64,000 nucleotides of DNA from Euprymna scolopes (taxonomy: Eukaryota). Shown here piece after piece: positions 30,811 through 64,000 of this stretch (the stretch's first letter is position 1; the number at the start of each line of letters is the position of its first letter). The notes under the pieces were generated by a model that was given only the letters and a program-made list of their open reading frames with translations, was not told the DNA's origin and ran no database searches. The position numbers and the translations under genes are program-made. The stretch lies in the NCBI GenBank assembly GCA_053919585.1, contig CM132816.1; one strand, given 5' to 3'.

Positions 30811-31438
30811 ATTTCTTTGTACTTGCGAAAGATACGTAAATCCAAATTTGATGCTAAAATAACACTCGTCGGCAAAACACATAAAGCGAAGATTTATGTC
30901 ATGTAAGGGAAAAATAAAAAATCTATTCGGCATTAATTTAATTGTTTTATTTAATTTGTTGGAGATGCTGACAAACGCGTTTTATAGCTTAAATGCTTCG
31001 CCTATGGGAAAATCAAAGCAGACTGAAAAAATTATTAAGGAAATTTAACAAAGTTTTTTCAGGCACACTTGGTTGTTGTACGAAGTTGAAGTTTCGAATT
31101 AAAAGACAACGTAAAACTAGTATTGAAGCCAAAAAGAAAAGTTCCATTTCCATTGTTAGAAACAATAGACCAAGAATTAGAATAAAATTGAATAATTTAA
31201 AAAGTAGACTACTCTAAATGGGCATCACCTAGAGTCTAGGTGAAAAAAAAAACAGAATAAACAAGGGTTGGAGTGGATTTTTAACCAGGACTGAATTAAT
31301 ATTTAAGTGGCCATTCGTATAACCTTTTCACACGGGAGGAGACATTTTAAAAGTTAAATGAAGGCAAAATATTCCCGAAAATTGATTTGTCAGAAGATTA
31401 TCTGCAAGTCGAGGTAAAAAAAGAATGTACAAAGTAGT

Positions 31439-33422
31439 TAAACATTAACACAAAATTATGTGTTGATTAAACATTAACAAATAATTATGTGTTCATTAAA
31501 CATAAACACATAATTATATGTTCATTAAACATTAACACATAATTATATGTTGACTATTCATTAATACATAAGTATGTGTTGATTTAACATTAAAACAATT
31601 GTGCATTGATTTAACATTAAAACATAATTATGTGCTGATTAAACATTAAAACATAATTGTCTGTTGATTTAACATTAACACATAATTATGCATTGATTTA
31701 ACATTAACACATAATTATGTGTTGATTAAACAGTAACACATAATTGTGTGTTGATTTAACATTAAAACATAATTATGTGTTGATTAAAACTTAACACATA
31801 ATTATGTGTTGATTAAAACTTAACACATAATTATGTGTTGATTAAAACTTAACACATAATTATGTGTTGATTAAACAGTAACACATAATTGTGTGTTGAT
31901 TTAACATTAACACGTAATTATGTGTTGATTAAAACTTAACACATAATTATGTGTTGATTAAAACTTAACACATAATTATGTGTTGATTAAACAGTAACAC
32001 ATAATTGTGTGTTGATTAAAACATTAACACACAATTATGTGTTAATGTTTAATCAACACACTATGTGCTGATTAAGCATTGACACATAATTATGCGTTGA
32101 TTAATACATTAACACATCATTATGTGTCGATTACACATTAACACGTAATTATGGGTTGATTAAACATTAACATACATAATTATATGTTGATTAAACATTA
32201 ACACACATAATTATGTGTTGATTAAATATTAAAACATAATTATGCGTTGATTACACATTAACATATAATTATGTGTTGATTACACATTAACACATAATTA
32301 TGTGTTGATTAAAACATTAACACACATAATTATGTGTTGATTAAAACATTAACACACATAAGTATATGTTGATTAAACATTAACACACATAAGTATATGT
32401 TGATTAAACATTAACACACATAATTATATGTTGATTAAACATTAACACACATAATTATATGTTGATTAAACATTAACACACATAATTGCGTGTTGATTAA
32501 AACAATAACATACAATTTTATGTGATGACTAAAACATTAACACACATAATTATATGTTGATTAAACATTAACACACATAATTATATGTTGATTAAACATT
32601 AACACACATAATTGCGTGTTGATTAAAACAATAACATACAATTTTATGTGATGACTAAAACATTAACACACATAATTATGTGTTGATTAAACATTAACAC
32701 ACATAATCATATGTTGATTAAACATTAACACACATAAGTATATGTTGATTAAACATTAACACACATAATTATGTGTTGATTAAAACATTAACACACATAA
32801 TTATATGTTGATTAAAACATTAACACACATAATTATATGTTGATTAAACATTAACACACATAATTATATGTTGATTAAACATTAACACACATAATTATAT
32901 GTTGATTAAAACAATAACACACATAATTATATGTTGATTAAACATTAACACACATAATTATATGTTGATTAAAACAATAACACACATAATTATATGTTGA
33001 TTAAACATTAACACACATAATTACGTGTTGATTAAAACAATAACACACATAATTTTATGTGATTACTAAAACATTAACACACATAATTATGTGTTGATTA
33101 AAACATTAACACACATAATTATATGTTGATTAAAACATTAACACACATAATTATGTGTTGATTAAACATTAACACACATAATTATATTGTTGATTAAACA
33201 TTAACACACATAATTACGTGTTGATTAAAACAATAACACACATAATTTTATGTGATGACTAAAACATCAACACACATAATTATGTGTTGATTAAAACATT
33301 AACACACATAATTATGTGTTGATTAATCATTAACACACATAATTATATGTTGATTAAAACATTAACACACATAATTATGTGTTGATTAAACATTAACACA
33401 CATAATTATGTGTAGATTAAAA
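31439..33422. repeat. 29-32-bp satellite AACATTAAC(AC)ACATAATTATGTGTTGATTA with a palindromic core, ~65 units
   Basis: Direct periodicity. Core AACACATAATTATGTGTT is its own reverse complement. Mostly 29-bp units on the left and 31-32-bp units on the right. Confidence 0.97.
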
Positions 33423-37447: not shown

Positions 37448-39242
37448 TTATCATATACACTAGACAATTATCATATACACTAGACAAATATCATATACAC
37501 TAGACAATTATCATATACACTAGACAAATATCATATACACTAGACAATTATCATATACACTAGACAATTTTCATATACACTAGACAAATATCATATACAC
37601 TAGACAATTATCATATACACTAGACAAATATCATATACACTAGACAATTATCATATACACTAGACAATTATCATATACACTAGACAATTTTCATATACAC
37701 TAGACAATTTTCATATACACTAGACAATTTTCATATACACTAGACAATTATCATATACACTAGACAATTTTCATATACACTAGACAATTATCATATACAC
37801 TAGACAATTTTCATATACACTAGACAATTATCATATACACTAGACAATTATCATATACACTAGACAATTTTCATATACACTAGACAATTATCATATACAC
37901 TAGACAATTATCATATACACTAGACAATTATCATATACACTAGACAATTTTCATATACACTAGACAATTATCATATACACTAGACAATTTTCATATACAC
38001 TAGACAATTATCATATACACTAGACAATTTTCATATACACTAGACAAATATCATATACACTAGACAATTTTCATATACACTAGACAATTATCATATACAC
38101 TAGACAATTTTCATATACACTAGACAATTATCATATACACTAGACAATTATCATATACACTAGACAATTATCATATACACTAGACAATTTTCATATACAC
38201 TAGACAATTATCATATACACTAGACAATTTTCATATACACTAGACAATTATCATATACACTAGACAATTATCATATACACTAGACAATTATCATATACAC
38301 TAGACAATTATCATATACACTAGACAATTTTCATATACACTAGACAATTATCATATACACTAGACAATTTTCATATACACTAGACAATTATCATATACAC
38401 TAGACAATTATCATATACACTAGACAATTATCATATACACTAGACAATTTTCATATACACTAGACAATTATCATATACACTAGACAATTTTCATATACAC
38501 TAGACAATTATCATATACACTAGACAATTTTCATATACACTAGACAAATATCATATACACTAGACAATTTTCATATACACTAGACAATTATCATATACAC
38601 TAGACAATTTTCATATACACTAGACAATTATCATATACACTAGACAATTATCATATACACTAGACAATTATCATATACACTAGACAATTTTCATATACAC
38701 TAGACAATTATCATATACACTAGACAATTTTCATATACACTAGACAATTATCATATACACTAGACAATTATCATATACACTAGACAATTATCATATACAC
38801 TAGACAATTATCATATACACTAGACAATTTTCATATACACTAGACAAATATCATATACACTAGACAAATTTTATATACACTAGACAAATATCATATACAC
38901 TAGACAATTATCATATACACTAGACAATTATCATATACACTAGACAATTATCATATACACTTAACAATTATCATATACACTAGACAATTATCATATACAC
39001 TAGACAAATATCATTTACACTAGACAATTATCATATACACTAGACAAATATCATATACACTAGACAATTATCATATACACTAGACAAATATCATATACAC
39101 TAGACAATTATCATATACACTAGACAGTTTTCATATACACTAGACAATTATCATATACACTAGACAATTATCATATACACTTAACAATTATCATATACAC
39201 TAGACAATTTTCATATACACTAGACAATTTTCATATACACTA
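37448..39242. repeat. 20-bp satellite TCATATACACTAGACAATT(A/T), ~90 units, highly homogeneous
   Basis: Exact 20-bp phase is kept throughout. Variation is almost only CAATTA/CAATTT/CAAATA. Confidence 0.99.
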
Positions 39243-48500: not shown

Positions 48501-50030
48501 CACATTACACTAAAGTGTTTTTTTAATCCACAGACTGCACATGGGTAAGGAAACTCCTTACATCCTCGACAAACAGCATCCGAGTGTTCACCCAGACACG
48601 AAGTACATAATTTCAATTCCTTGGCCCTTCGGCATTTAGCTTCGAAAGAAGAATATTTTTTACAGTTCTTAATCAAATGGTCTATAGCATCGCAGAGCTT
48701 ACATAATAAAATGGCCTTCACCTCGCGTGGAGAAGACGCCATATTGGATTTTGTATTAGGTGAAGAAGACGCCATATTGGATTTTGTATCAGGTGAAAAA
48801 GATGCCATATTGGATGTTGTATCAGGTGAAGAAGACGCCATATTGGAGTTTGTATTAGGTGAAGAAGACGGCATATTGGATTTTGTATTAGGTGAAGAAG
48901 ACGCCATATTGGAGTTTGTATTAGGTGAAGAAGACGGCATATTGGATTTTGTATTAGGTGAAGAAGACGCCATATTGGATTTTGTATTAGGTGAAGAAGA
49001 CGCCAATCTTGGCGCACAATTTTCCCGCTGAACATCGAGCGGGGCGGCAATCATGGATTCCATAAATATTATAGTATTTAGAGAACCGTTCGCCACTTCT
49101 ACTCATTAATTCTCTCCTTATAATGTTAGGAAATTTAGCAAATAATACATGGGCTATCAATGCCCCCGAGGTTCTACCCTCAATAAAAAAAAAGTCAGTC
49201 TCGAAAGACTTATCTAGTTCTGTCAGATCTCGTTTAACCTTTTCGAGAAATGACCTTAAATTTTTTTGATCCATTACGCGAGACGGACTAGGAATAATCT
49301 CATCGAAAACCCAATTTCTAATTAAATCTGGATTTAAATATTTTCCCTTAAAAGTTCCACGGCTACATCATAGTTGTTCAATGTTACATATAGACTGGAG
49401 ACCACTTCAAAGGCTTCTCCAAGTAGTTTAGATTTAAGCACTTACAATTTGTCAGCCTTGTTCAAATTATCTGTACAAAATTTGAATTTATTCAGAAAGG
49501 TTCTGAACGAAAACTTATCATCTATGGACGTTCTGGAAAACTTCGGACAGTGCATTTTTACGGGCATAATCGTCGTAGGTTGAATATCTCGTGGCGTATC
49601 TATTTTCAGTTTCAACGATAACAATTTTTCTTCAATTTCCGAAGAAAACTCCTCCGAAATCTCACAAAGGTGCGATTTCTCCTCATTTGGAGTCTTGATT
49701 AGAACCATGTATATCAGATCATCCAGATCCTTCAACCAACTTCTAATTACCGTCTCTGGGGACCTTAAAATATCTGGCGAAGGGTTGTTAACTGCTAACC
49801 ACTTCACAGCACTATTTATACGAAGCTTTTTGGCTTCCCATTTAGTCATTAATTCCTTTCGTCCTTAGAGAACAATTAATAAAATAGCAGAGATATAATT
49901 ATCCGCAAATGTATAAGGTGGCGAAAACCTCCAATATTATTCCAAAACGGAATCGTAACCACAAATCAATAAACACAACGCTAACGAAATTTGTCGTCAG
50001 CAATTTATCGGCCCCAAAATTAGGGGAAAA
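45515..50030 (-). mobile_element. Degenerate BEL/Pao LTR retrotransposon internal region (gag-PR-RT-partial RNase H-integrase)
   Basis: Triple Cys/His knuckle (CKLCDAIDHLIKNC, CTSCLGEHSDAVC, CAVCGLKKHFSVMC), protease CLIDSGSQ (~48363-48386), RT motifs VPHRPV...TTKIRPVFNC, GDIRKAFL and NFYVDN, then DKDGLIRTRGRI and integrase GVDFTG, SDNAKSF, WHGGAWERLI, LTPNHFL. Many frameshifts; 3' end truncated. Confidence 0.93.
48729..49005 (-). repeat. 33-bp in-frame minisatellite in BEL gag, ~8 copies of MASSSPNTKSN
   Basis: Unit GGTGAAGAAGACGCCATATTGGATTTTGTATTA, lying immediately upstream of the zinc knuckles in ORF 48416-49096. Confidence 0.95.
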
Positions 50031-52347: not shown

Positions 52348-52478
52348 NNNNNNNNNNNNNNNNNNNNNNNNNNNNNNNNNNNNNNNNNNNNNNNNNNNNN
52401 NNNNNNNNNNNNNNNNNNNNNNNNNNNNNNNNNNNNNNNNNNNNNNNNNNNNNNNNNNNNNNNNNNNNNNNNNNNNNN
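52348..52478. other. Assembly gap (N run)
   Basis: 131 N. Confidence 1.
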
Positions 52479-52964: not shown

Positions 52965-54220
52965 AAAGAATCCTGCAAGATGTTGGTTTACGTTACATTT
53001 AAACTTCTGCAGGTTAGTACAGTCAGGGAAGCAGGTAACATGAAAGGAATTCCTATTGATGTTCGAGGGAAAAAATTGTTAGAGTAGAAAGCTTTCTGGC
53101 ATTTAAGGACTTCAACAGTGAAAGGCGAGATTTTGCTATAGAGCGGGTTTGTCGGGAATATGTATGTCGAGGTACAACGAGTTCACCAGGGCACATTTCA
53201 TTAAAAAATATGTAATACAGGCACAGAAACACAACATTAAGTTGATGGAACAGGAGCTGGAGCTTAGTTGACAAAGTGGGAACATTTATCAAATTGAAAA
53301 CTTTTGTGTACCCTATCCAAGACGGAGAGGTTAGTGGTAAATGCACCAGCCCAGATGTGACAACAATACTCCGTGTATGGGCGAATGGTGGCCTTGTAGC
53401 GGTACAGAAGATACTCTCAGGTGTGAAAAGTATTCGCGCTCGATAGGGGCAACCTACCTTTTTTTGCAGAAGCCACCGAAATGTCCTCAATGTATTTATT
53501 ACAGTTCATATTGCCCGAGGAGTTTGAAGGAAGAATTCTTAGGTAGGGTGTTATTTGTCATGGATGTCATTGGTTGAAGAGGCGTTTTGTAATTGTTAAA
53601 GGAGAGCAGCTTAGTCTTACTAGCATTTAACGTTACCATCTATTTGCGGTCTCATTCCATTACGGTTTGGAAGTCATTTTCTAACAATTTTGCCATTGTC
53701 TTAGATTTGTGTACATCAGTTTTCTCTCGTGCATGTCATAGAGCGTTGTATCATCAACAAATATACCGACCACGGACACAATATTATCAGGGAGGTCGTT
53801 TATGAATATCAGGAATAATAGTGGTTCAAGGGTCGATCTTTGAGGCACTCTCACATTAATGTTATGTTGCTTGGATATAGTTCTATTAATGACAATCTGG
53901 ATGTCCCTATTTTCTAAGAAAGATCTAATTATATTTAGTATATGTACGATTAAATTTTCATTAGCAGTCCTTCGTGCCAGACTTTGTCAAAAAGTATGGA
54001 TATATCAAGGACTACAGCCCTGGCTTCGCCCGCATTGTCCGGTGCATGGTGTATGCGTTGGAAGATGACTGTTAAAATATCCACAGTAGAACGGCATTGC
54101 CTAAATCCATGCAGTTTGTCAGAGAAAAGATCAGCTTTTGCGAGGTGGTGTACTAGTACTTGATTAAGGTCTCAGAGATTTTAGCGAAGAGTGAGAAGAG
54201 ACTGATAGACCGATAATTGA
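52965..54220 (-). mobile_element. CR1/L2-group LINE ORF2 3' half (degenerate); its 5' side runs into the 32-bp satellite
   Basis: On the minus strand: NYRSISLFSLFAKISETLI, VLDIS..FDKVWH, IFVDDTT, YKATIRPYTEYCCHIWAGA, FYSNNFFPRTS...CFPDCTNLQKFKCNVNQHL. Confidence 0.9.
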
Positions 54221-57200
54221 GAGGGGGAAGAGACTGATAGACCGATAATTGATAAGGGGAAGAGACTGATAGACCGATAATTGAGAGTGGGAAGAGACTG
54301 ATAGACCGATAATTGAGAGGGGGAAGAGACTGATAGACCGATAATTGAGAGGGGGAAGAGACTGATAGACCGATAATTGATAGGGGGAAGAGACTGATAG
54401 ACCGATAATTGATAGGGGGAAAAGACTGATAGACCGATAATTGAGAGGGGGAAGAGACTGATAGACCGATAATTGAGAGTGGGAAGAGACTGATAGACCG
54501 ATAATTGAGAGGGGGAAGAGACTGATAGACCGATAATTGAGAGTGGGAAGAGACTGATAGACCGATAATTGAGAGGGGGAAAAGACTGATAGACCGATAA
54601 TTGAGAGGGGGAAGAGACTGATAGACCGATAATTGAGAGTGGCAAGAGACTGATAGACCGATAATTGAGAGTGGGAAGAGACTGATAGACCGATAATTGA
54701 TAGGGGGAAGAGACTGATAGACCGATAATTGAGAGGGGGAAGAGACTGATAGACTGATAATTGAGATGGGGAAGAGACTGATAGACCGATAATTGAGAGT
54801 GGGAAGAGACTGATAGACCGATAATTGAGAGGGGGAAGAGACTGATAGACCGATAATTGATAGGGGGAAGAGACTGATAGACCGATAATTGAGAGGGGGA
54901 AGAGACTGATAGACCGATAATTGAGAGGGGGAAGAGACTGATAGACCGATAATTGATAGGGGGAAGAGACTGATAGACCGACAATTGAGAGGGGGAAGAG
55001 ACTGATAGACCGATAATTGATAGGGGGAAGAGACTGATAGACCGATAATTGAGAGGGGGAAGAGACTGATAGACCGATAATTGATAGGGGGAAGAGACTG
55101 ATAGACCGATAATTGAGAGGGGAAAGAAACTGATAGACCGATAATTGATAGGGGGAAGAGACTGATAGACCGATAATTGAGAGTGGCAAAAGACTGATAG
55201 ACCGATAATTGAGAGTGGGAAGAGACTGATAGACCGATAATTGATAGGGGGAAGAGACTGATAGACCGATAATTGAGAGGGGGAAGAGACTGATAGACTG
55301 ATAATTGAGATGGGGAAGAGACTGATAGACCGATAATTGAGAGTGGGAAGAGACTGATAGACCGATAATTGATAGGGGGAAGAGACTGATAGACCGATAA
55401 TTGATAGGGGGAAGAGACTGATAGACCGATAATTGATAGGGGGAAAAGACTGATAGACCGATAATTGAGAGGGGGAAGAGACTGATAGACCGATAATTGA
55501 GAGTGGGAAGAGACTGATAGACCGATAATTGAGAGGGGGAAGAGACTGATAGACCGATAATTAAGAGGGGGAAGAGACTGATAGACCGATAATTGAGAGG
55601 GGGAAAAGACTGATAGACCGATAATTGAGAGGGGGAAGAGACTGATAGACCGATAATTGAGAGTGGCAAGAGACTGATAGACCGATAATTGAGAGTGGGA
55701 AGAGACTGATAGACCGATAATTGATAGGGGGAAGAGACTGATAGACCGATAATTGAGAGGGGGAAGAGACTGATAGACTGATAATTGAGATGGGGAAGAG
55801 ACTGATAGACCGATAATTGAGAGTGGGAAGAGACTGATAGACCGATAATTGAGAGGGGGAAGAGACTGATAGACCGATAATTGATAGGGGGAAGAGACTG
55901 ATAGACCGATAATTGAGAGGGGGAAGAGACTGATAGACCGATAATTGAGAGGGGGAAGAGACTGATAGACCGATAATTGATAGGGGGAAGAGACTGATAC
56001 ACCGATAATTGAGAGGGGGAAGAGACTGATAGACCGATAATTGAGAGGGGGAAGAGACTGATAGACCGATAATTGATAGGGGGAAGAGACTGATAGACCG
56101 ATAATTGAGAGGGGGAAGAGACTGATAGACCGATAATTGAGAGTGGGAAGAGACTGATAGACCGATAATTGATAGGGGGAAGAGACTGATAGACCGATAA
56201 TTGATAGGGGGAAGAGACTGATAGATCGATAATTGATAGGGGGAAGAGACTGATAGACCGATAATTGATAGGGGGAAGAGACTGATAGACCGAGAATTGA
56301 TAGGGGGAAGAGACTGATAGACCGATAATTGATAGGGGGAAGAGACTGATAGACCGATAATTGATAGGGGGAAGAGACTGATAGACCGATAATTGATAGG
56401 GGGAAGAGACTGATAGACCGATAATTGATAGGGGGAAGAGACTGATAGACCGATAATTGATAGGGGGAAGAGACTGATAGACCGATAATTGAGAGGGGGA
56501 AGAGACTGATAGACCGATAATTGAGAGGGGGAAGAGACTGATAGACCGATAATTGATAGGGGGAAGAGACTGATAGACCGATAATTGATAGGGGGAAGAG
56601 AGTGATAGACCGATAATTGAGAGTGGGAAGAGACTGATAGACCGATAATTGATAGGGGGAAGAGACTGATAGACCGATAATTGAGAGGGGGAAGAGACTG
56701 ATAGACCGATAATTGATAGGGGAAAGAGACTGATAGACCGATAATTGATAGGGGGAAGAGACTGATAGACCGATAATTGAGAGGGGGAAGAGACTGATAG
56801 ACCGATAATTGAGAGGGGGAAGAGACTGATAGACCGATAATTGATAGGGGGAAGAGACTGATAGACCGATAATTGAGAGGGGGAAGAGACTGATAGACCG
56901 ATTATTGATAGGGGGAAGAGACTGATAGACCGATAATTGAGAGGGGGAAGAGACTGATAGACCGATAATTGATAGGGGGAAGAGACTGATAGACCGATAA
57001 TTGAGAGGGGGAAGAGACTGATAGACCGATAATTGAGAGGGGGAAGAGACTGATAGACCGATAATTGAGAGTGGGAAGAGACTGATAGACCGATAATTGA
57101 TAGGGGGGAAGAGACTGATAGACCGATAATTGAGAGGGGGAAAAGACTGATAGACCGATAATTGAGAGGGGGAAGAGACTGATAGACCGATAATTGAGAG

Positions 57201-60200
57201 GGGGAAGAGACTGATAGACCGATAATTGAGAGGGGGAAAAGACTGATAGACCGATAATTAAGAGGGGGAAGAGACTGATAGACCGATAATTGAGAGTGGG
57301 AAGAGACTGATAGACCGATAATTGAGAGTGGGAAGAGACTGATAGACCGATAATTGATAGGGGGAAGAGTCTGATAGACCGATAATTGAGAGGGGGAAGA
57401 GACTGATAGACCGATAATTGAGAGGGGGAAGAGACTGATAGACTGATAATTGAGATGGGGAAGAGACTGATAGACCGATAATTGAGAGTGGGAAGAGACT
57501 GATAGACCGATAATTGAGAGGGGGAAGAGACTGATAGACCGATAATTGAGAGGGGGAAGAGACTGATAGACCGATAATTGAGAGGGGGAAGAGACTGATA
57601 GACTGATAAGTGAGATGGGGAAGAGACTGATGGACCGATAATTGAGAGTTGGAAGAGACTGATAGACCGATAATTGAGAGGGGGAAGAGACTGATAGACC
57701 GATAATTGATAGGGGGAAGAGACTGATAGACCGATAATTGAGAGGGGGAAGAGACTGATAGACCGATAATTGAGAGGAGGAAGAGACTGATAGACCAATA
57801 ATTGATAGGGGGAAGAGACTGATAGACCGACAATTGAGAGGGGGAAGAGACTGATAGACCGATAATTGATAGGGGGGAGAGACTGATAGACCGATAATTG
57901 AGAGGGGGAAGAGACTGATAGACCGATAATTGATAGGGGGAAGAGACTGATAGACCGATAATTGAGAGGGGGAAGAAACTGATAGACCGATAATTGATAG
58001 GGGGAAGAGGCTGATAGACCGATAATTGAGAGTGGCAAGAGACTGATAGACCGATAATTGAGAGTGGGAAGAGACTGATAGACCGATAATTGATAGGGGG
58101 AAGAGACTAATAGACCGATAATTGAGAGGGGGAAGAGACTGATAGACTGATAATTGAGATGGGGAAGAGACTGATAGACCGATAATTGAGAGTGGAAGAG
58201 ACTGATAGACCGATTATTGAGAGGGGGAAGAGACTGATAGACCGATAATTGATAGGGGGAAGAGACTGATAGACCGATAATTGATAGGGGGAAAAGACTG
58301 ATAGACCGATAATTGAGAGGGGGAAGAGACTGATAGACCGATAATTGAGAGGGGGAAGAGACTGATAGACCGATAATTGAGAGGGGGAAGAGACTGATAG
58401 ACCGATAATTGATAGGGGGAAGAGACTGATAGACCGATAATTGATAGGGGGAAGAGACTGATAGACCGATAATTGAGAGGGGGAAGAGACTGATAGACTG
58501 ATAATTGAGATGGGGAAGAGACTGATAGACCGATAATTGAGAGTGGGAAGAGACTGATAGACCGATAATTGAGAGGGGGAAGAGACTGATAGACCGATAA
58601 TTGAGAGGGGGAAGAGACTGATAGACCGATAATTGAGAGGGGGAAGAGACTGATAGACTGATAATTGAGATGGGGAAGAGACTGATGGACCGATAATTGA
58701 GAGTTGGAAGAGACTGATAGACCGATAATTGAGAGGGGGAAGAGACTGATAGACCGATAATTGATAGGGGGAAGAGACTGATAGACCGATAATTGAGAGG
58801 GGGGAGAGACTGATAGACCGATAATTGAGAGGGGGAAGAGACTGATAGACCGATAATTGATAGGGGGAAGAGACTAATAGACCGATAATTGAGAGGGGGA
58901 AGAGACTGATAGACTGATAATTGAGATGGGGAAGCGACTGATAGACCGATAATTGAGAGTGGAAGAGACTGATAGACCGATAATTGAGAGGGGGAAGAGA
59001 CTGATAGACCGATAATTGATAGGGGGAAGAGACTGATAGACCGATAATTGATAGGGGGAAAAGACTGATAGACCGATAATTGAGAGGGGGAAGAGACTGA
59101 TAGACCGATAATTGAGAGTGGGAAGAGACTGATAGACCGATAATTGAGAGGGGGAAGAGACTGATAGACCGATAATTGAGAGGGGGAAGAGACTGATAGA
59201 CCGATAATTGAGAGGGGGAAAAGACTGATAGACCGATAATTGAGAGGGGGAAGAGACTGATAGACCGATAATTGAGAGTGGCAAGAGACTGATAGACCGA
59301 TAATTGAGAGTGAGAAGAGACTGATAGACCGATAATTGATAGGGGGAAGAGACTGATAGATCGATAATTGAGAGGGGGAAGAGACTGATAGACTGATAAT
59401 TGAGATGGGGAAGAGACTGATAGACCGATAATTGAGAGTGGGAAGAGACTGATAGACCGATAATTGAGAGGGGGAAGAGACTGATAGACCGATAATTGAT
59501 AGGGGGAAGAGACTGATAGACAGATAATTGAGAGGGGGAAGAGACTGATAGACCGATAATTGAGAGGGGGAAGAGACTGATAGACCGATAATTGATAGGG
59601 GGAAGAGACTGATAGACCGACAATTGAGAGGGGGAAGAGACTGATAGACCGATAATTGAGAGTGGGAAGAGACTGATAGACCGATAATTGATAGGGGGAA
59701 GAGACTGATAGACCGATAATTGAGAGGGGGAAGAGACTGATAGACCGATAATTGATAGGGGGAAGAGACTGATAGACAGATAATTGATAGGAGGAAGAGA
59801 CTGATAGACCGATAATTGAGAGGGGGAAGAGACTGATAGACCGATAATTGATAGGAGGGAAGAGACTGATAGACCGATAATTGAGAGGGGGAAGAGACTG
59901 ATAGACCGATAATTGAGAGTGGGAAGAGACTGATAGACCGATAATTGATAGGGGGAAGAGACTGATAGACCGATAATTGATAGGGGAAGAGACTGATAGA
60001 TCGATAATTGATAGGGGGAAGAGACTGATAGACCGATAATTGATAGGGGGAAGAGACTGATAGACCGATAATTGATAGGGGGAAGAGACTGATAGACCGG
60101 TAATTGATAGGGGGAAGAGACTGATAGACCGATAATTGATAGGGGGAAGAGACTGATAGACCGATAATTGAGAGGGGGAAGAGACTGATAGACCGATAAT

Positions 60201-63200
60201 TGAGAGGGGGAAGAGACTGATAGACCGATAATTGAGAGGGGGAAGAGACTGATAGACCGATAATTGATAGGGGGAAGAGAGTGATAGACCGATAATTGAG
60301 AGTGGGAAGAGACTGATAGACCAATAATTGATAGGGGGAAGAGACTGATAGACCGATAATTGAGAGGGGGAAGAGACTGATAGACCGATAATTGAGAGGG
60401 GGAAGAGACTGATAGACCGATAATTGATAGGGGGAAGAGACTGATAGACCGATAATTGAGAGGGGGAAGAGACTGATAGACCGATAATTGAGAGGGGGAA
60501 GAGACTGATAGACCGATAATTGATAGGGGGAAGAGACTGATAGACCGATTATTGAGAGGGGGAAGAGACTGATAGACCGATTATTGATAGGGGGAAGAGA
60601 CTGATAGACCGATAATTGAGAGGGGGAAGAGACTGATAGACCGATAATTGATAGGGGGAAGAGACTGATAGACCGATAATTGATAGGGGGAAGAGACTGA
60701 TAGACCGATAATTGAGAGGGGGAAGAGACTGATAGACCGATAATTGAGAGTGGGAAGAGACTGATTGACCGATAATTGATAGGGGGGAAGAGACTGATAG
60801 ACCGATAATTGATAGGGGGAAAAGACTGATAGACCGATAATTGAGAGGGGGAAGAGACTGATAGACCGATAATTGAGAGGGGGAAGAGACTGATAGACCG
60901 ATAATTGAGAGGGGGAAAAGACTGATAGACCGATAATTGAGAGGGGGAAGAGACTGATAGACCGATAATTGAGAGTGGGAAGAGACTGATAGACCGATAA
61001 TTGAGAGTGGGAAGAGACTGATAGACCGATAATTGATAGGGGGAAGAGACTGATAGACCGATAATTGAGAGGGGGAAGAGACTGATAGACCGATAATTGA
61101 GAGGGGGAAGAGACTGATAGACCGATAATTGATAGGGGGAAGAGACTGATAGACCGATAATTGATAGGGGGAAGAGACTGATAGACCGATAATTGAGAGG
61201 GGGAAGAGACTGATAGACTGATAATTGAGATGGGGAAGAGACTGATAGACCGATAATTGAGAGTGGGAAGAGACTGATAGACCGATAATTGAGAGGGGGA
61301 AGAGACTGATAGACCGATAATTGAGAGGGGGAAGAGACTGATAGACCGATAATTGAGAGGGGGAAGAGACTGATAGACTGATAATTGAGATGGGGAAGAG
61401 ACTGATGGACCGATAATTGAGAGTGGGAAGAGACTGATAGACCGATGATTGAGAGGGGGAAGAGACTGATAGACCGATAATTGATAGGGGGAAGAGACTG
61501 ATAGACCGATAATTGAGAGGAGGAAGAGACTGATAGACCGATAATTGAGAGGGGGAAGAGACTGATAGACCGATAATTGATAGGGGGAAGAGACTGATAG
61601 ACCGATAATTGAGAGTGGGAAGAGAGTGATAGACCGATAATTGATAGGGGGAAGAGACTAATAGACCGATAATTGAGAGGGGGAAGAGATTGATAGACTG
61701 ATAATTGAGATGGGGAAGAGGCTGATAGACCGATAATTGAGAGGGGGAAGAGACTGATAGACCGATAATTGAGAGGGGGAAGAGACTGATAGACCGATAA
61801 TTGATAGGGGGAAGAGACTGATAGACCGATAATTGAGAGGGGGAAGAGACTTATAGACCGATAATTGATAGGGGAAGAGACTGATAGACCGATAATTGAG
61901 AGGGGGAAGAGACTGATAGACCGATAATTGATAGGGGGAAGAGACTGATAGACCGATAATTGAGAGGGGGAAGAGACTGATAGACTTATAATTGAGAGTG
62001 GGAAGAGACTGATAGACCGATAATTGATAGGGGGGAAGGGACTGATAGACCGATAATTGATAGGGGGAAAAGACTGATAGACCGATAATTGAGAGGGGGA
62101 AGAGACTGATAGACCGATAATTGAGAGGGGGAAGAGACTGATAGACCGATAATTGAGAGGGGGAAGAGACTGATAGACCGATAATTGATAGGGGGAAGAG
62201 ACTGATAGACCGATAATTGAGAGTGGGAAGAGACTGATAGACCGATAATTGAGAGTGGGAAGAGACTGATAGACCGATAATTGATAGGGGGAAGAGACTG
62301 ATAGACCGATAATTGAGAGGGGGAAGAGACTGATAGACCGATAATTGAGAGGGGGAAGAGACTGATAGACCGATAATTGATAGGGGGAAGAGACTGATAG
62401 ACCGATAATTGATAGGGGGAAGAGACTGATAGACCGATAATTGATAGGGGGAAGAGACTGATAGACCGATAATTGAGAGGGGGAAGAGACTGATAGACCG
62501 ATAATTGAGAGTGGGAAGAGACTGATAGACCGATAATTGATAGGGGGAAAAGACTGATAGACCGATAATTGAGAGGGGGAAGAGACTGATAGGCCGATAA
62601 TTGAGAGGGGGAAGAGACTGATAGACCGATAATTGAGAGTGGGAAGAGACTGATAGACCGATAATTGAGAGGGGGAAGAGACTGATAGACCGATAATTGA
62701 GAGTGGGAAGAGACTGATAGACCGATAATTGATAGGGGGAAGAGACTGATAGACCGATAATTGATAGGGGAAGAGACTGATAGATCGATAATTGATAGGG
62801 GGAAGAGACTGATAGACCGATAATTGATAGGGGGAAGAGACTGATAGACCGATAATTGATAGGGGGAAGAGACTGATAGACCGATAATTGATAGGGGGAA
62901 GAGACTGATAGACCGATAATTGATAGGGGGAAGAGACTGATAGACCGATAATTGAGAGGGGGAAGAGACTGATAGACCGATAATTGAGAGGGGGAAGAGA
63001 CTGATAGACCGATAATTGAGAGGGGGAAGAGACTGATAGACCGATAATTGAGAGGGGGAAGAGACTGATAGACCGATAATTGATAGGGGGAAGAGACTTA
63101 TAGACCGATAATTGAGAGTGGCAAGAGACTGATAGACCGATAATTGATAGGGGGAAGAGACTGATAGACCGATAATTGATAGGGGGAAGAGACTGATAGA

Positions 63201-64000
63201 CCGATAATTGAGAGGGGGAAGAGACTGATAGACCGATAATTGATAGGGGGAAGAGACTGATAGACCGATAATTGAGAGGGGGAAGAGACTGATAGACCGA
63301 TAATTGAGAGGGGGAAGAGACTGATAGACCGATAATTGATAGGGGGAAGAGACTGATAGACCGATAATTGAGAGGGGGAAGAGACTGATAGACCGATAAT
63401 TGATAGGGGGAAGAGACTGATAGACCGATAATTGATAGGGGGAAGAGACTGATAGACCGATAATTGAGAGTGGGAAGAGACTGATAGACCGATAATTGAT
63501 AGGGGGAAGAGACTGATACACCGATAATTGAGAGGGGGAAGAGACTGATAGACCGATAATTGAGAGGGGGAAGAGACTGATAGACCGATAATTGATAGGG
63601 GGAAGAGACTGATAGACCGATAATTGAGAGGGGGAAGAGACTGATAGACCGATAATTGAGAGGGGGAAGAGACTGATAGACCGATAATTGATAGGGGGAA
63701 GAGACTGATAGACCGATAATTGAGAGGGGGAAGAGACTGATAGACCGATAATTGATAGGGGGAAGAGACTGATAGACCGATAATTGAGAGGGGGAAGAGA
63801 CTGATAGACCGATAATTGATAGTGGGAAGAGACTGATAGACCGATAATTGAGAGGGGGAAGAGACTGATAGACTTATAATTGAGAGTGGGAAGAGACTGA
63901 TAGACCGATAATTGATAGGGGGGAAGGGACTGATAGACCGATAATTGATAGGGGGAAAAGACTGATAGACCGATAATTGAGAGGGGGAAGAGACTGATAG
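54188..64000. repeat. 32-bp satellite GA(G/T)AGGGGGAAGAGACTGATAGACCGATAATT, ~305 units, runs off the right edge
   Basis: Direct 32-bp periodicity with high homogeneity. Confidence 0.99.

What the first reader, a model, noticed from the sequence alone, without database searches (positions are those of the whole stretch)
54100..64000. A 10-kb, 32-bp satellite is the amplified RT motif NYRxISL of the adjacent LINE
The reverse complement of the monomer, AATTATCGGTCTATCAGTCTCTTCCCCCTCTC, encodes NYRSISLFPL. The edge unit continues seamlessly as NYRSISLFSLFAKISETLI, the conserved NYRPISLL..xSKxxE segment of non-LTR RTs, at its expected position upstream of LDISxAFDKVWH and xVDD. The edge variant GAGTGAGAAG reappears inside the array (~59310), and GAGTGGGAAG looks intermediate. 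A CTCT microhomology bounds the unit. The LINE is heavily decayed while the array is homogeneous, so expansion or homogenisation long postdates insertion (inference).
Basis: partly seen in the sequence, partly recalled or inferred. Interest (0 to 1): 0.75.

Follow-up and report, generated by a model that had tools for sequence, protein, structure and literature searches.

The report
Minisatellite grown inside a dead LINE
A 32-base piece of one dead jumping gene (a LINE), coding the start of its reverse transcriptase, has been copied head to tail about 372 times where it sits; this is a very clean example of a known way for repeat arrays to arise, not a new kind of element.

Summary

**The array.** It starts at window 54188, runs off the window end and stops 2,097 bases later. 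It holds about 372 units, 11.9 kb in all, with 95-96% matches.

**The flanks.** Both flanks belong to one 5'-truncated, decayed non-LTR retrotransposon copy on the minus strand. The near flank reads NYRSISLFSLFAKISETLI and then the frameshifted reverse transcriptase (RT). Most of the 29 other family copies align straight through both flanks, and every copy that keeps this segment has the 32 bases once. In the copies that could be parsed, CTCT short repeats exactly 32 bases apart bound the unit.

**Uniqueness.** All 316 genome-wide hits to the unit-to-unit junction lie in this one array.

**Likely history.** A first duplication arose by slippage between the short direct repeats. The array then grew by unequal exchange; one 27-unit block is duplicated with 26 identical units. 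The timing "long after insertion" is plausible but not proven. Which unit variant is ancestral cannot be told.

**Novelty.** Arrays derived from LINE ORF2 are already on record (PROsat, Pvc20, chicken HinfI/CR1). This scan has also reported other single-locus, transposon-derived arrays elsewhere in this (probably cephalopod) genome. It is a new member of a known kind and of modest interest.

The parts
52976..54187 (-). 3' part of a 5'-truncated, decayed non-LTR retrotransposon (LINE) copy: the RT from just after the NYRxISL motif to the element's 3' end
   Evidence: Local blastn against 29 other family copies covers 52976-54219 at 78-80% identity, and all copies end at about 52976. Minus-strand pieces match Pfam RVT_1 (window:53953-54171, E 2e-6; window:53684-53986, E 2e-4). 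Stops and frameshifts are seen. Terminal branch is 0.133.
54188..54219 (-). Near-edge unit. It is the last unit of the array in the LINE's sense, continuous with the LINE 3' part, and has the variant head GAGTGAG on the + strand
   Evidence: It aligns to the single copy of the segment in the other family copies.
54188..64000 (-). 32-bp tandem array, the part inside the window (about 307 of about 372 units). It continues to L031:2097, which is G000:C34:29082097. Beyond it, L031:2098-2256 on the minus strand is the LINE 5' part (159 bases), which lies outside the window.
   Evidence: TRF. Unit map: 63 distinct variants; by the first eight bases of the unit, three main types of 167, 113 and 46 units. 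The far flank is translated and aligned.
59307..59338 (-). The only internal unit with the edge-type head (GAGTGAG)
   Evidence: It sits in the block cEBADCABAABA, a paralogue of cCBADCABAABA nearer the edge, so it is one G-to-A step from the C type.
63467..64000 (.). Start of a duplicated 27-unit block. 26 consecutive units are identical between 63467.. and 64332.., the latter lying beyond the window end in L031.
   Evidence: A run of 12 identical units at a lag of 32 units (54572 against 55596) was also found.

Best explanation
A single 5'-truncated copy of an abundant non-LTR retrotransposon was inserted here on the minus strand and decayed. Inside it lies a 32-base segment that codes the first RT motif (N-Y-R-x-I-S-L, the start of Pfam RVT_1). 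In unexpanded family copies this segment is bounded by short direct repeats (CTCT, in some copies CCCTCT) exactly 32 bases apart. The segment was duplicated once by slipped-strand mispairing or unequal exchange between those repeats. This is the Haber-Louis / Taylor-Breden model of minisatellite birth. Once two units existed, the array grew in place to about 372 units (11.9 kb). Growth was by unequal sister-chromatid or homologue exchange, slippage and gene conversion, and included multi-unit steps. It is a locus-specific minisatellite-type array, a by-product of DNA replication and repair. No function is shown. Shown directly: the origin of the unit, the colinearity of both flanks, the uniqueness of the locus, the direct repeats in the ancestors and the block duplications. 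Inferred: the molecular mechanism of the first duplication and of the growth, and the timing.
For: Array and extent. The near flank is the RT continuing from the unit. The far flank is the RT upstream part. In the alignment with 29 other family copies, the copies that span the segment carry it once with both flanks colinear, and this copy has lost no LINE bases at either boundary. LINE extents are 52976-54219 and L031:2066-2256. The two flanks have equal terminal branches, 0.133 and 0.131, as expected for one insertion. RVT_1 starts exactly at NYR in an open 388-aa stretch of a sister copy (L016, E 5e-17). That stretch aligns to the NFRPISLMNIDAKI region of human LINE-1 ORF2p (PDB 8sxt). In all 19 parsable copies the unit bounded by these two positions is exactly 32 bases long; 15 have CTCT at the upstream end and 17 at the downstream end. 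Junction pattern: 316 hits genome-wide, 0 on the other strand, and 316 counted inside this array. Block duplications of 26 and 12 identical units are seen. The birth models are quoted in PMC3389668.
Against: The first duplication left no direct trace, and 4-6 bases of homology is short. Which unit variant is ancestral is ambiguous. No long read or independent assembly was available to confirm the array length. The short-read contigs laid do not bridge from unique flank into the second unit. The orthologous locus in a species without the array was not seen, so the timing is open.
Confidence: 0.87

Rival explanations
1. The seed duplication, or a short array, was made during retrotransposition itself. 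The RT slipped or jumped back on its template at the CTCT microhomology during target-primed reverse transcription, and only the later growth happened in the chromosome.
For: Nothing in the data excludes it, because the first step leaves the same product either way. Template jumping of non-LTR RTs at microhomology is known from my own knowledge and was not tested here.
Against: Among many thousands of family copies (13,424 first-look candidates), no other copy carries even a two-unit tandem that matches the degenerate junction pattern with up to one mismatch. If RT slippage at this site were common, dimers should be seen.
Confidence: 0.08
2. The growth of the array was by rolling-circle replication of an excised multi-unit circle that re-integrated, rather than by stepwise unequal exchange.
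For: A 27-unit block is present twice with 26 identical units. Such blocks could come from a circle.
Against: There is no regular higher-order period. Unit identity at lags of 1-40 units stays at 0.14-0.23 without a clear peak. The repeated blocks occur at many different lags (27, 32, 85, 98, 125...), as expected from many separate unequal exchanges.
Confidence: 0.1
3. The array length, or the array itself, is an assembly artefact: a short tandem run inflated by the assembler.
For: No read spanning the array was examined. Only contigs of short-read runs could be laid.
Against: There are 63 distinct unit variants in a non-periodic order, with nested block duplications. An inflated collapse would not produce that. 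The array bins have summed word depth of about 450-1,760 in three runs of two organism labels, while locus-specific single-copy contigs have depth of about 4-23 (tables 2 and 8).
Confidence: 0.04
4. A LINE landed in or beside an older satellite, and the likeness of the unit to the RT motif is chance.
For: None found.
Against: Both flanks are parts of the same LINE and meet exactly at the unit. The unit aligns base for base with the single-copy segment of the other copies. No such array exists anywhere else in the genome.
Confidence: 0.01

Closest known systems
Transposon-derived minisatellites that grow in place inside a single transposon copy (Ahmed and Liang 2012, PMC3389668: 23% of human minisatellites/satellites derive from transposable elements and expand by local duplication)
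   Same: A short internal piece of a transposon is repeated head to tail inside one copy, the rest of the copy flanks it, and growth is by local duplication.
   Different: Here the array is long for its class (372 units, 11.9 kb). It sits in a mollusc-type 5.9-Gb genome. Unexpanded sister copies show the bounding direct repeats directly, whereas the human survey could explain only 6% of cases by the known birth models.
Satellite DNAs derived from LINE ORF2: PROsat of Phodopus roborovskii, Pvc20 of the harbour seal, and the HinfI repeat with CR1 ORF2 in chicken (table in Zattera and Bruschi 2022, PMC9659126)
   Same: The repeat unit descends from LINE ORF2 coding sequence.
   Different: Those are multi-locus or abundant satellites with long units, known by similarity only. 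This one is a single-locus array with a 32-base unit, still embedded in its parent copy with both joints intact.
Minisatellite birth models: Haber and Louis 1998 (a unit flanked by direct repeats of 5-10 bp) and Taylor and Breden 2000 (slipped-strand mispairing at non-contiguous repeats), as summarised in PMC3389668
   Same: In unexpanded copies the unit is flanked by short direct repeats whose spacing equals the unit length (32 in 19 of 19 copies). The array is a whole number of units plus about the length of the repeat (372.2 units).
   Different: The repeat is only 4 bases (CTCT) in most copies and 6 (CCCTCT) in some. The event itself cannot be observed.
Satellites from tandem transposon insertions (double-insertion model, McGurk and Barbash 2018; from my own knowledge)
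   Same: A transposon supplies the raw material of a tandem array.
   Different: In that model the unit is a whole or nearly whole element made by repeated insertion. Here the unit is 32 bases from inside one insertion.

Membership tests
Transposon-derived tandem array grown in situ | The unit is homologous to a segment that is single-copy in other copies of the transposon family | tested here: met
   In the alignment of 29 family copies, the copies that keep the segment have it once, and it matches the unit position for position.
Transposon-derived tandem array grown in situ | Both flanks of the array are colinear with the transposon and meet at the unit without loss | tested here: met
   Equal terminal branches of 0.133 and 0.131.
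Transposon-derived tandem array grown in situ | The expansion is private to one copy and not inherited from the master element | tested here: met
   All 316 genome-wide junction hits lie in this array.
Satellite DNA in the strict sense (abundant, many loci or megabase blocks, heterochromatic) | High genomic abundance or several loci | tested here: not met
   One locus of 11.9 kb in 5.9 Gb. By unit size and copy number it is a large minisatellite-type array.
Minisatellite birth at flanking short direct repeats (Haber-Louis / Taylor-Breden) | In the unexpanded ancestor, short direct repeats lie one unit length apart at the unit's ends | tested here: met
   The unit is 32 bases long in 19 of 19 parsable copies. 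CTCT is present at the upstream end in 15 of 19 and at the downstream end in 17 of 19; CCCTCT is at both ends in L006 and L010.
Minisatellite birth at flanking short direct repeats (Haber-Louis / Taylor-Breden) | The slippage event itself | not testable with these tools
   It can only be inferred from the product.
Non-LTR retrotransposon reverse transcriptase (Pfam RVT_1) | Match to RVT_1 above the curated cut-off, with the NYRxISL motif at the domain start | tested here: met
   Sister copy L016:1469-2632 (minus strand) scores 62.7 bits against a cut-off of 29.6, with the match starting at NYR. The window's own broken pieces score 28.1 and 21.6 bits, below the cut-off, as expected for fragments. 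The best solved relative is human LINE-1 ORF2p.
Non-LTR retrotransposon clade (CR1, L2, Jockey, RTE and others) | Placement in an RT phylogeny, endonuclease type and 3' end type | not tested
   No full-length copy was in hand and the large protein searches were not spent on this.
Tandem transposon dimers (double-insertion model) | The unit is a whole or nearly whole element | tested here: not met
   The unit is 32 bases from inside a 1.4-kb fragment.

The most novel reading that the evidence does not exclude
This locus may be one instance of a genome-wide habit. In this large, probably cephalopod, genome, short internal pieces of dead transposons and genes bounded by a few bases of direct repeat may be turned unusually often into single-locus arrays of 2-80 kb. 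If so, the genome would hold hundreds of independent, datable satellite births with their unexpanded sister copies as controls. That would allow a direct test of the birth models, which explain only 6% of human transposon-derived tandem repeats (PMC3389668). In support: six arrays with 18-36-base units fill about 40 kb of the 84 kb examined here. Arrays with units of 18-54 bases turn up in 8 of the 29 sampled LINE loci, 113 kb in all. The scan's unchecked notes list many similar cases. Against: the one neighbouring array I looked at (31-base unit) was not shown to be internal to a transposon.
Probability: 0.35. Interest if true: 0.55.

Novelty: new member of a known kind. Interest (0 to 1): 0.3.

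Why it matters
[quoted passage not shown] Here every element of the classical birth model is visible at one locus. The parent transposon copy is there with both joints intact. Thousands of unexpanded sister copies show the short direct repeats one unit apart. The array is unique in the genome, and internal block duplications record how it grew. That makes it a good teaching or benchmark case, and a usable control locus for a genome-wide census of array births in this species. It does not change what is known: arrays derived from transposons and from LINE ORF2 are established, and no function is indicated.

Tried and rejected
**Search for other arrays of the unit.** A 192-base piece of the array found only two unrelated GA-rich arrays. 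These were C5:33.77 Mb (27-base unit) and C44:15.29 Mb (26/52-base unit), which share only the purine-rich part of the unit. They were rejected as relatives.

**Reads.** Only short-read contigs were laid, and other copies of the LINE family dominate them. Locus-specific contigs with 0-3 differences exist in organism A (X1, X2) and organism B (X3). Array words are deep in X1, X2 and X3 and almost absent in X5 (organism C). No contig bridges from unique flank into the second unit. "RNA?" for X2 is only a guess, so no claim about transcription is made, and only a weak claim that the array is lineage-restricted.

**Does the LINE resume beyond the DNA transposon at its 5' end?** No match was found in the remaining 7 kb of L031. 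Other copies are 5'-truncated at many different points, so this copy is simply truncated.

**Are the neighbouring arrays also internal to transposons?** The left flank of the 31-base array ends a ~240-base repeat about 10 bases before the array, but the sister copies do not continue into the unit or the right flank. For the 20-base array, the repeat in the flank ends 174 bases before the array. Neither is shown to be transposon-internal.

**Polarity of the unit variants.** It could not be resolved.

**Not done on purpose.** The N run at 52349-52478 was left alone.
Full report
**1. What is there**

Tandem Repeats Finder finds a 32-base array from window 54188 to the window end (306.7 copies, 95% matches, no indels). 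The window is G000:C34:29016001-29080000 in a 5.9-Gb assembly of 925 contigs. I fetched the next 20 kb. The array runs on for 2,097 bases (65.5 copies, 96% matches). The whole array is therefore about 11,910 bases, or 372 units.

On the minus strand the unit reads NYRSISLFPL. The near-edge unit reads on as NYRSISLFSLFAKISETLI. After frameshifts come ...VVLDISILFDKVWHEGLLMKI and ...GIFVDDTTLY, with many stop codons. The only corrections are the start (54188) and the size (11.9 kb).

**2.

Beyond the last unit, the minus strand of L031:2098-2256 reads ...LAELALVLSKLYDKYLAEPCLLNSWKMVIAVPVYKKFCERTNPP, followed directly by NYRSISL of the first unit. This is the stretch that precedes NYRxISL in non-LTR reverse transcriptases, as predicted.

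**3. Comparison with unexpanded copies**

The near flank has thousands of relatives in the genome: 13,424 first-look candidates, and the 40 that were scored are 78-83% identical. I aligned 29 of them around the motif.

- Every copy that keeps this segment has it once. Most of the 29 run straight from the sequence of the far flank through the unit into the sequence of the near flank. A few are truncated or deleted here.
- This copy has lost no LINE bases at either joint.
- Local blastn puts the LINE at window 52976-54219 and L031:2066-2256. All copies share the 3' end at about 52976.
- The 5' ends of the other copies differ, which is the usual 5' truncation. This copy ends 159 bases upstream of the array.
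- The two flanks give the same terminal branch length, 0.133 and 0.131 substitutions per site, against about 0.06 for the other copies. That fits one old insertion.

An open 388-residue stretch of a sister copy (L016) matches Pfam RVT_1 (E 5e-17), and the match begins exactly at NYR. It aligns to the NFRPISLMNIDAKI region of human LINE-1 ORF2p (PDB 8sxt). The amplified piece is therefore the first RT motif. The clade of the LINE was not determined.

**4. Uniqueness**

A degenerate 28-base pattern that spans the end of one unit and the start of the next cannot match an unexpanded copy. It has 316 hits in the whole assembly with up to one mismatch. All are on one strand, and the reversed control pattern has none. 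Counting the same pattern in the array locus alone also gives 316.

A 192-base piece of the array finds elsewhere only two GA-rich arrays with different units (27 and 26/52 bases), plus single units inside LINE copies. The array is private to this locus. No other copy of the family carries even a dimer that this pattern can see.

**5. How it probably arose**

Nineteen unexpanded copies could be parsed.

- In all 19 the unit is exactly 32 bases long.
- CTCT lies at the upstream end in 15 of them and at the downstream end in 17.
- Two copies (L006, L010) have CCCTCT at both ends.

This is the arrangement required by the classical models of minisatellite birth. These are duplication of a segment flanked by short direct repeats (Haber and Louis) and slipped-strand mispairing at non-contiguous repeats (Taylor and Breden), both summarised in PMC3389668. 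The array length of 372.2 units, a whole number of units plus roughly the short repeat, also fits. The first duplication itself is inferred.

**6. How it grew**

The units fall into 63 distinct variants. Sorted by the first eight bases of the unit, three types dominate, with + strand heads AGAGGGGG (167 units), ATAGGGGG (113) and AGAGTGGG (46). Variation is concentrated in the first eight bases of the + strand unit, which is the G-run at the unit joint.

The order of variants is not periodic. Unit identity at lags of 1-40 units stays between 0.14 and 0.23. Multi-unit blocks do recur:

- 26 consecutive identical units at a lag of 27 units (63467 against 64332);
- 12 at a lag of 32 units;
- 11 at a lag of 85 units;
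- several others.

The last 20 units at the far end are almost all the main type. This is the pattern expected from many unequal exchanges of differing register, with some very recent. A single rolling-circle burst would have left a regular higher-order period.

**7. Timing and variant polarity**

The units differ by 2.9% from their consensus and by 4.9% from each other. The LINE's terminal branch is 0.13, which is an upper bound on its age because it may include subfamily divergence. The present units therefore share an ancestor much younger than the insertion, and the 832-base identical block is very young.

This shows recent turnover, not the date of the first duplication.

The internal unit with the edge-type head (59307) lies in a block that is a paralogue of a block carrying the GAGTGGG form. 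It is therefore most simply an independent G-to-A change.

Whether the ...CCCACTCT or the ...CCCCCTCT form is ancestral cannot be settled. The family majority has the former. Several copies that share this copy's CTATCAG signature have the latter.

**8. Independent data**

Only contigs of short-read runs could be laid, on 1,291 bases across the near joint.

- Locus-specific contigs with 0-3 differences occur in runs labelled organism A and organism B.
- Array bins are deep in three runs of those two labels and almost empty in a run of organism C, although the LINE family is very abundant there.
- No contig bridges from the unique flank into the second unit.
- "RNA?" labels are guesses.

This gives weak support that the array is real and lineage-restricted. 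It says nothing on transcription.

**9. Surroundings**

At the LINE's 5' end a DNA transposon begins at L031:2258. It reads as a Tc1/mariner-type transposase by eye. Its other copies are 94-95% identical and all start at that base, so it is much younger than the LINE. The LINE does not resume beyond it within 7 kb.

The region is crowded with other arrays of 18-36-base units. Arrays of that kind also appear in 8 of the 29 sampled LINE loci.

Earlier notes of this scan, which are unchecked leads, call the genome probably cephalopod or mollusc. They describe other single-locus arrays grown from transposon or gene fragments. So the scan has found this kind of thing before on other DNA of this genome.

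**10. Comparison with what is known**

Reviews list satellites derived from LTRs, from the gag and pol domains of LTR retrotransposons, from the untranslated regions of LINEs and from the inverted repeats of DNA transposons (PMC12628747). They also list LINE ORF2-derived cases: PROsat, Pvc20 and chicken HinfI/CR1 (PMC9659126). In human, 23% of minisatellites and satellites derive from transposons and grow by local duplication (PMC3389668).

This locus is a member of that kind. It is not a satellite in the strict sense, being one locus of 12 kb. What sets it apart is only how completely the history can be read.

**11. Verdict**

Interest is 0.3.

Noticed in passing
window 1-21876; 31438-33421; 37448-39242; 48727-49005; L031:9525 to L032:1836; L032:5372-9882: The 84 kb examined holds six further or neighbouring tandem arrays with short units. 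They are 18 bases x 1,212 copies, 29/126 bases, 20 bases x 90, 33 bases x 8.5, 31 bases x about 77, and 36 bases x 125. Together with the 32-base array, roughly half of the region is made of such arrays.
   Followed up: partly
L031:2258-2990 (+ strand), just beyond the LINE 5' end: A fragment of a DNA transposon whose transposase reads ...HRNTIVKWMKKFKETGSVHDKPRSGRP... and contains stops. At least 39 other copies are 94-95% identical, and all begin at L031:2258 (786 first-look candidates). The family is therefore much younger than the LINE.
   Followed up: partly
window 54164-56002, 56902-60324, 61986-63521 (minus strand): Mechanical open reading frames of 612, 1,140 and 511 codons run through the array. 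The cause is that the sense strand of the unit has no stop codon in any frame. Nothing suggests that they are genes.
   Followed up: no
L031:3409-3668: A short interspersed repeat of about 260 bases is also present near two of the sampled LINE loci (L002, L029) at 73-78% identity.
   Followed up: no
L053:125-3977 (G000:C5:33766624-33770476) and L054:2311-5950 (G000:C44): Two GA/TC-rich arrays (27-base unit, and 26/52-base unit) resemble the purine-rich third of the 32-base unit at 71-73% identity. They lack the rest of the unit and were judged unrelated.
   Followed up: yes
L010:1-678: A 54-base unit repeated 12.6 times at 98% identity lies about 0.8 kb upstream of another copy of the same LINE family. 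Its origin was not examined.
   Followed up: no
L031:9277-9516: The left flank of the 31-base array is the end of a repeat family of about 240 bases that stops about 10 bases before the array. Sister copies do not continue into the unit, so a transposon-internal origin is not shown.
   Followed up: partly
window 52349-52478: A run of N lies about 500 bases beyond the LINE 3' end. It was left as it is.
   Followed up: no
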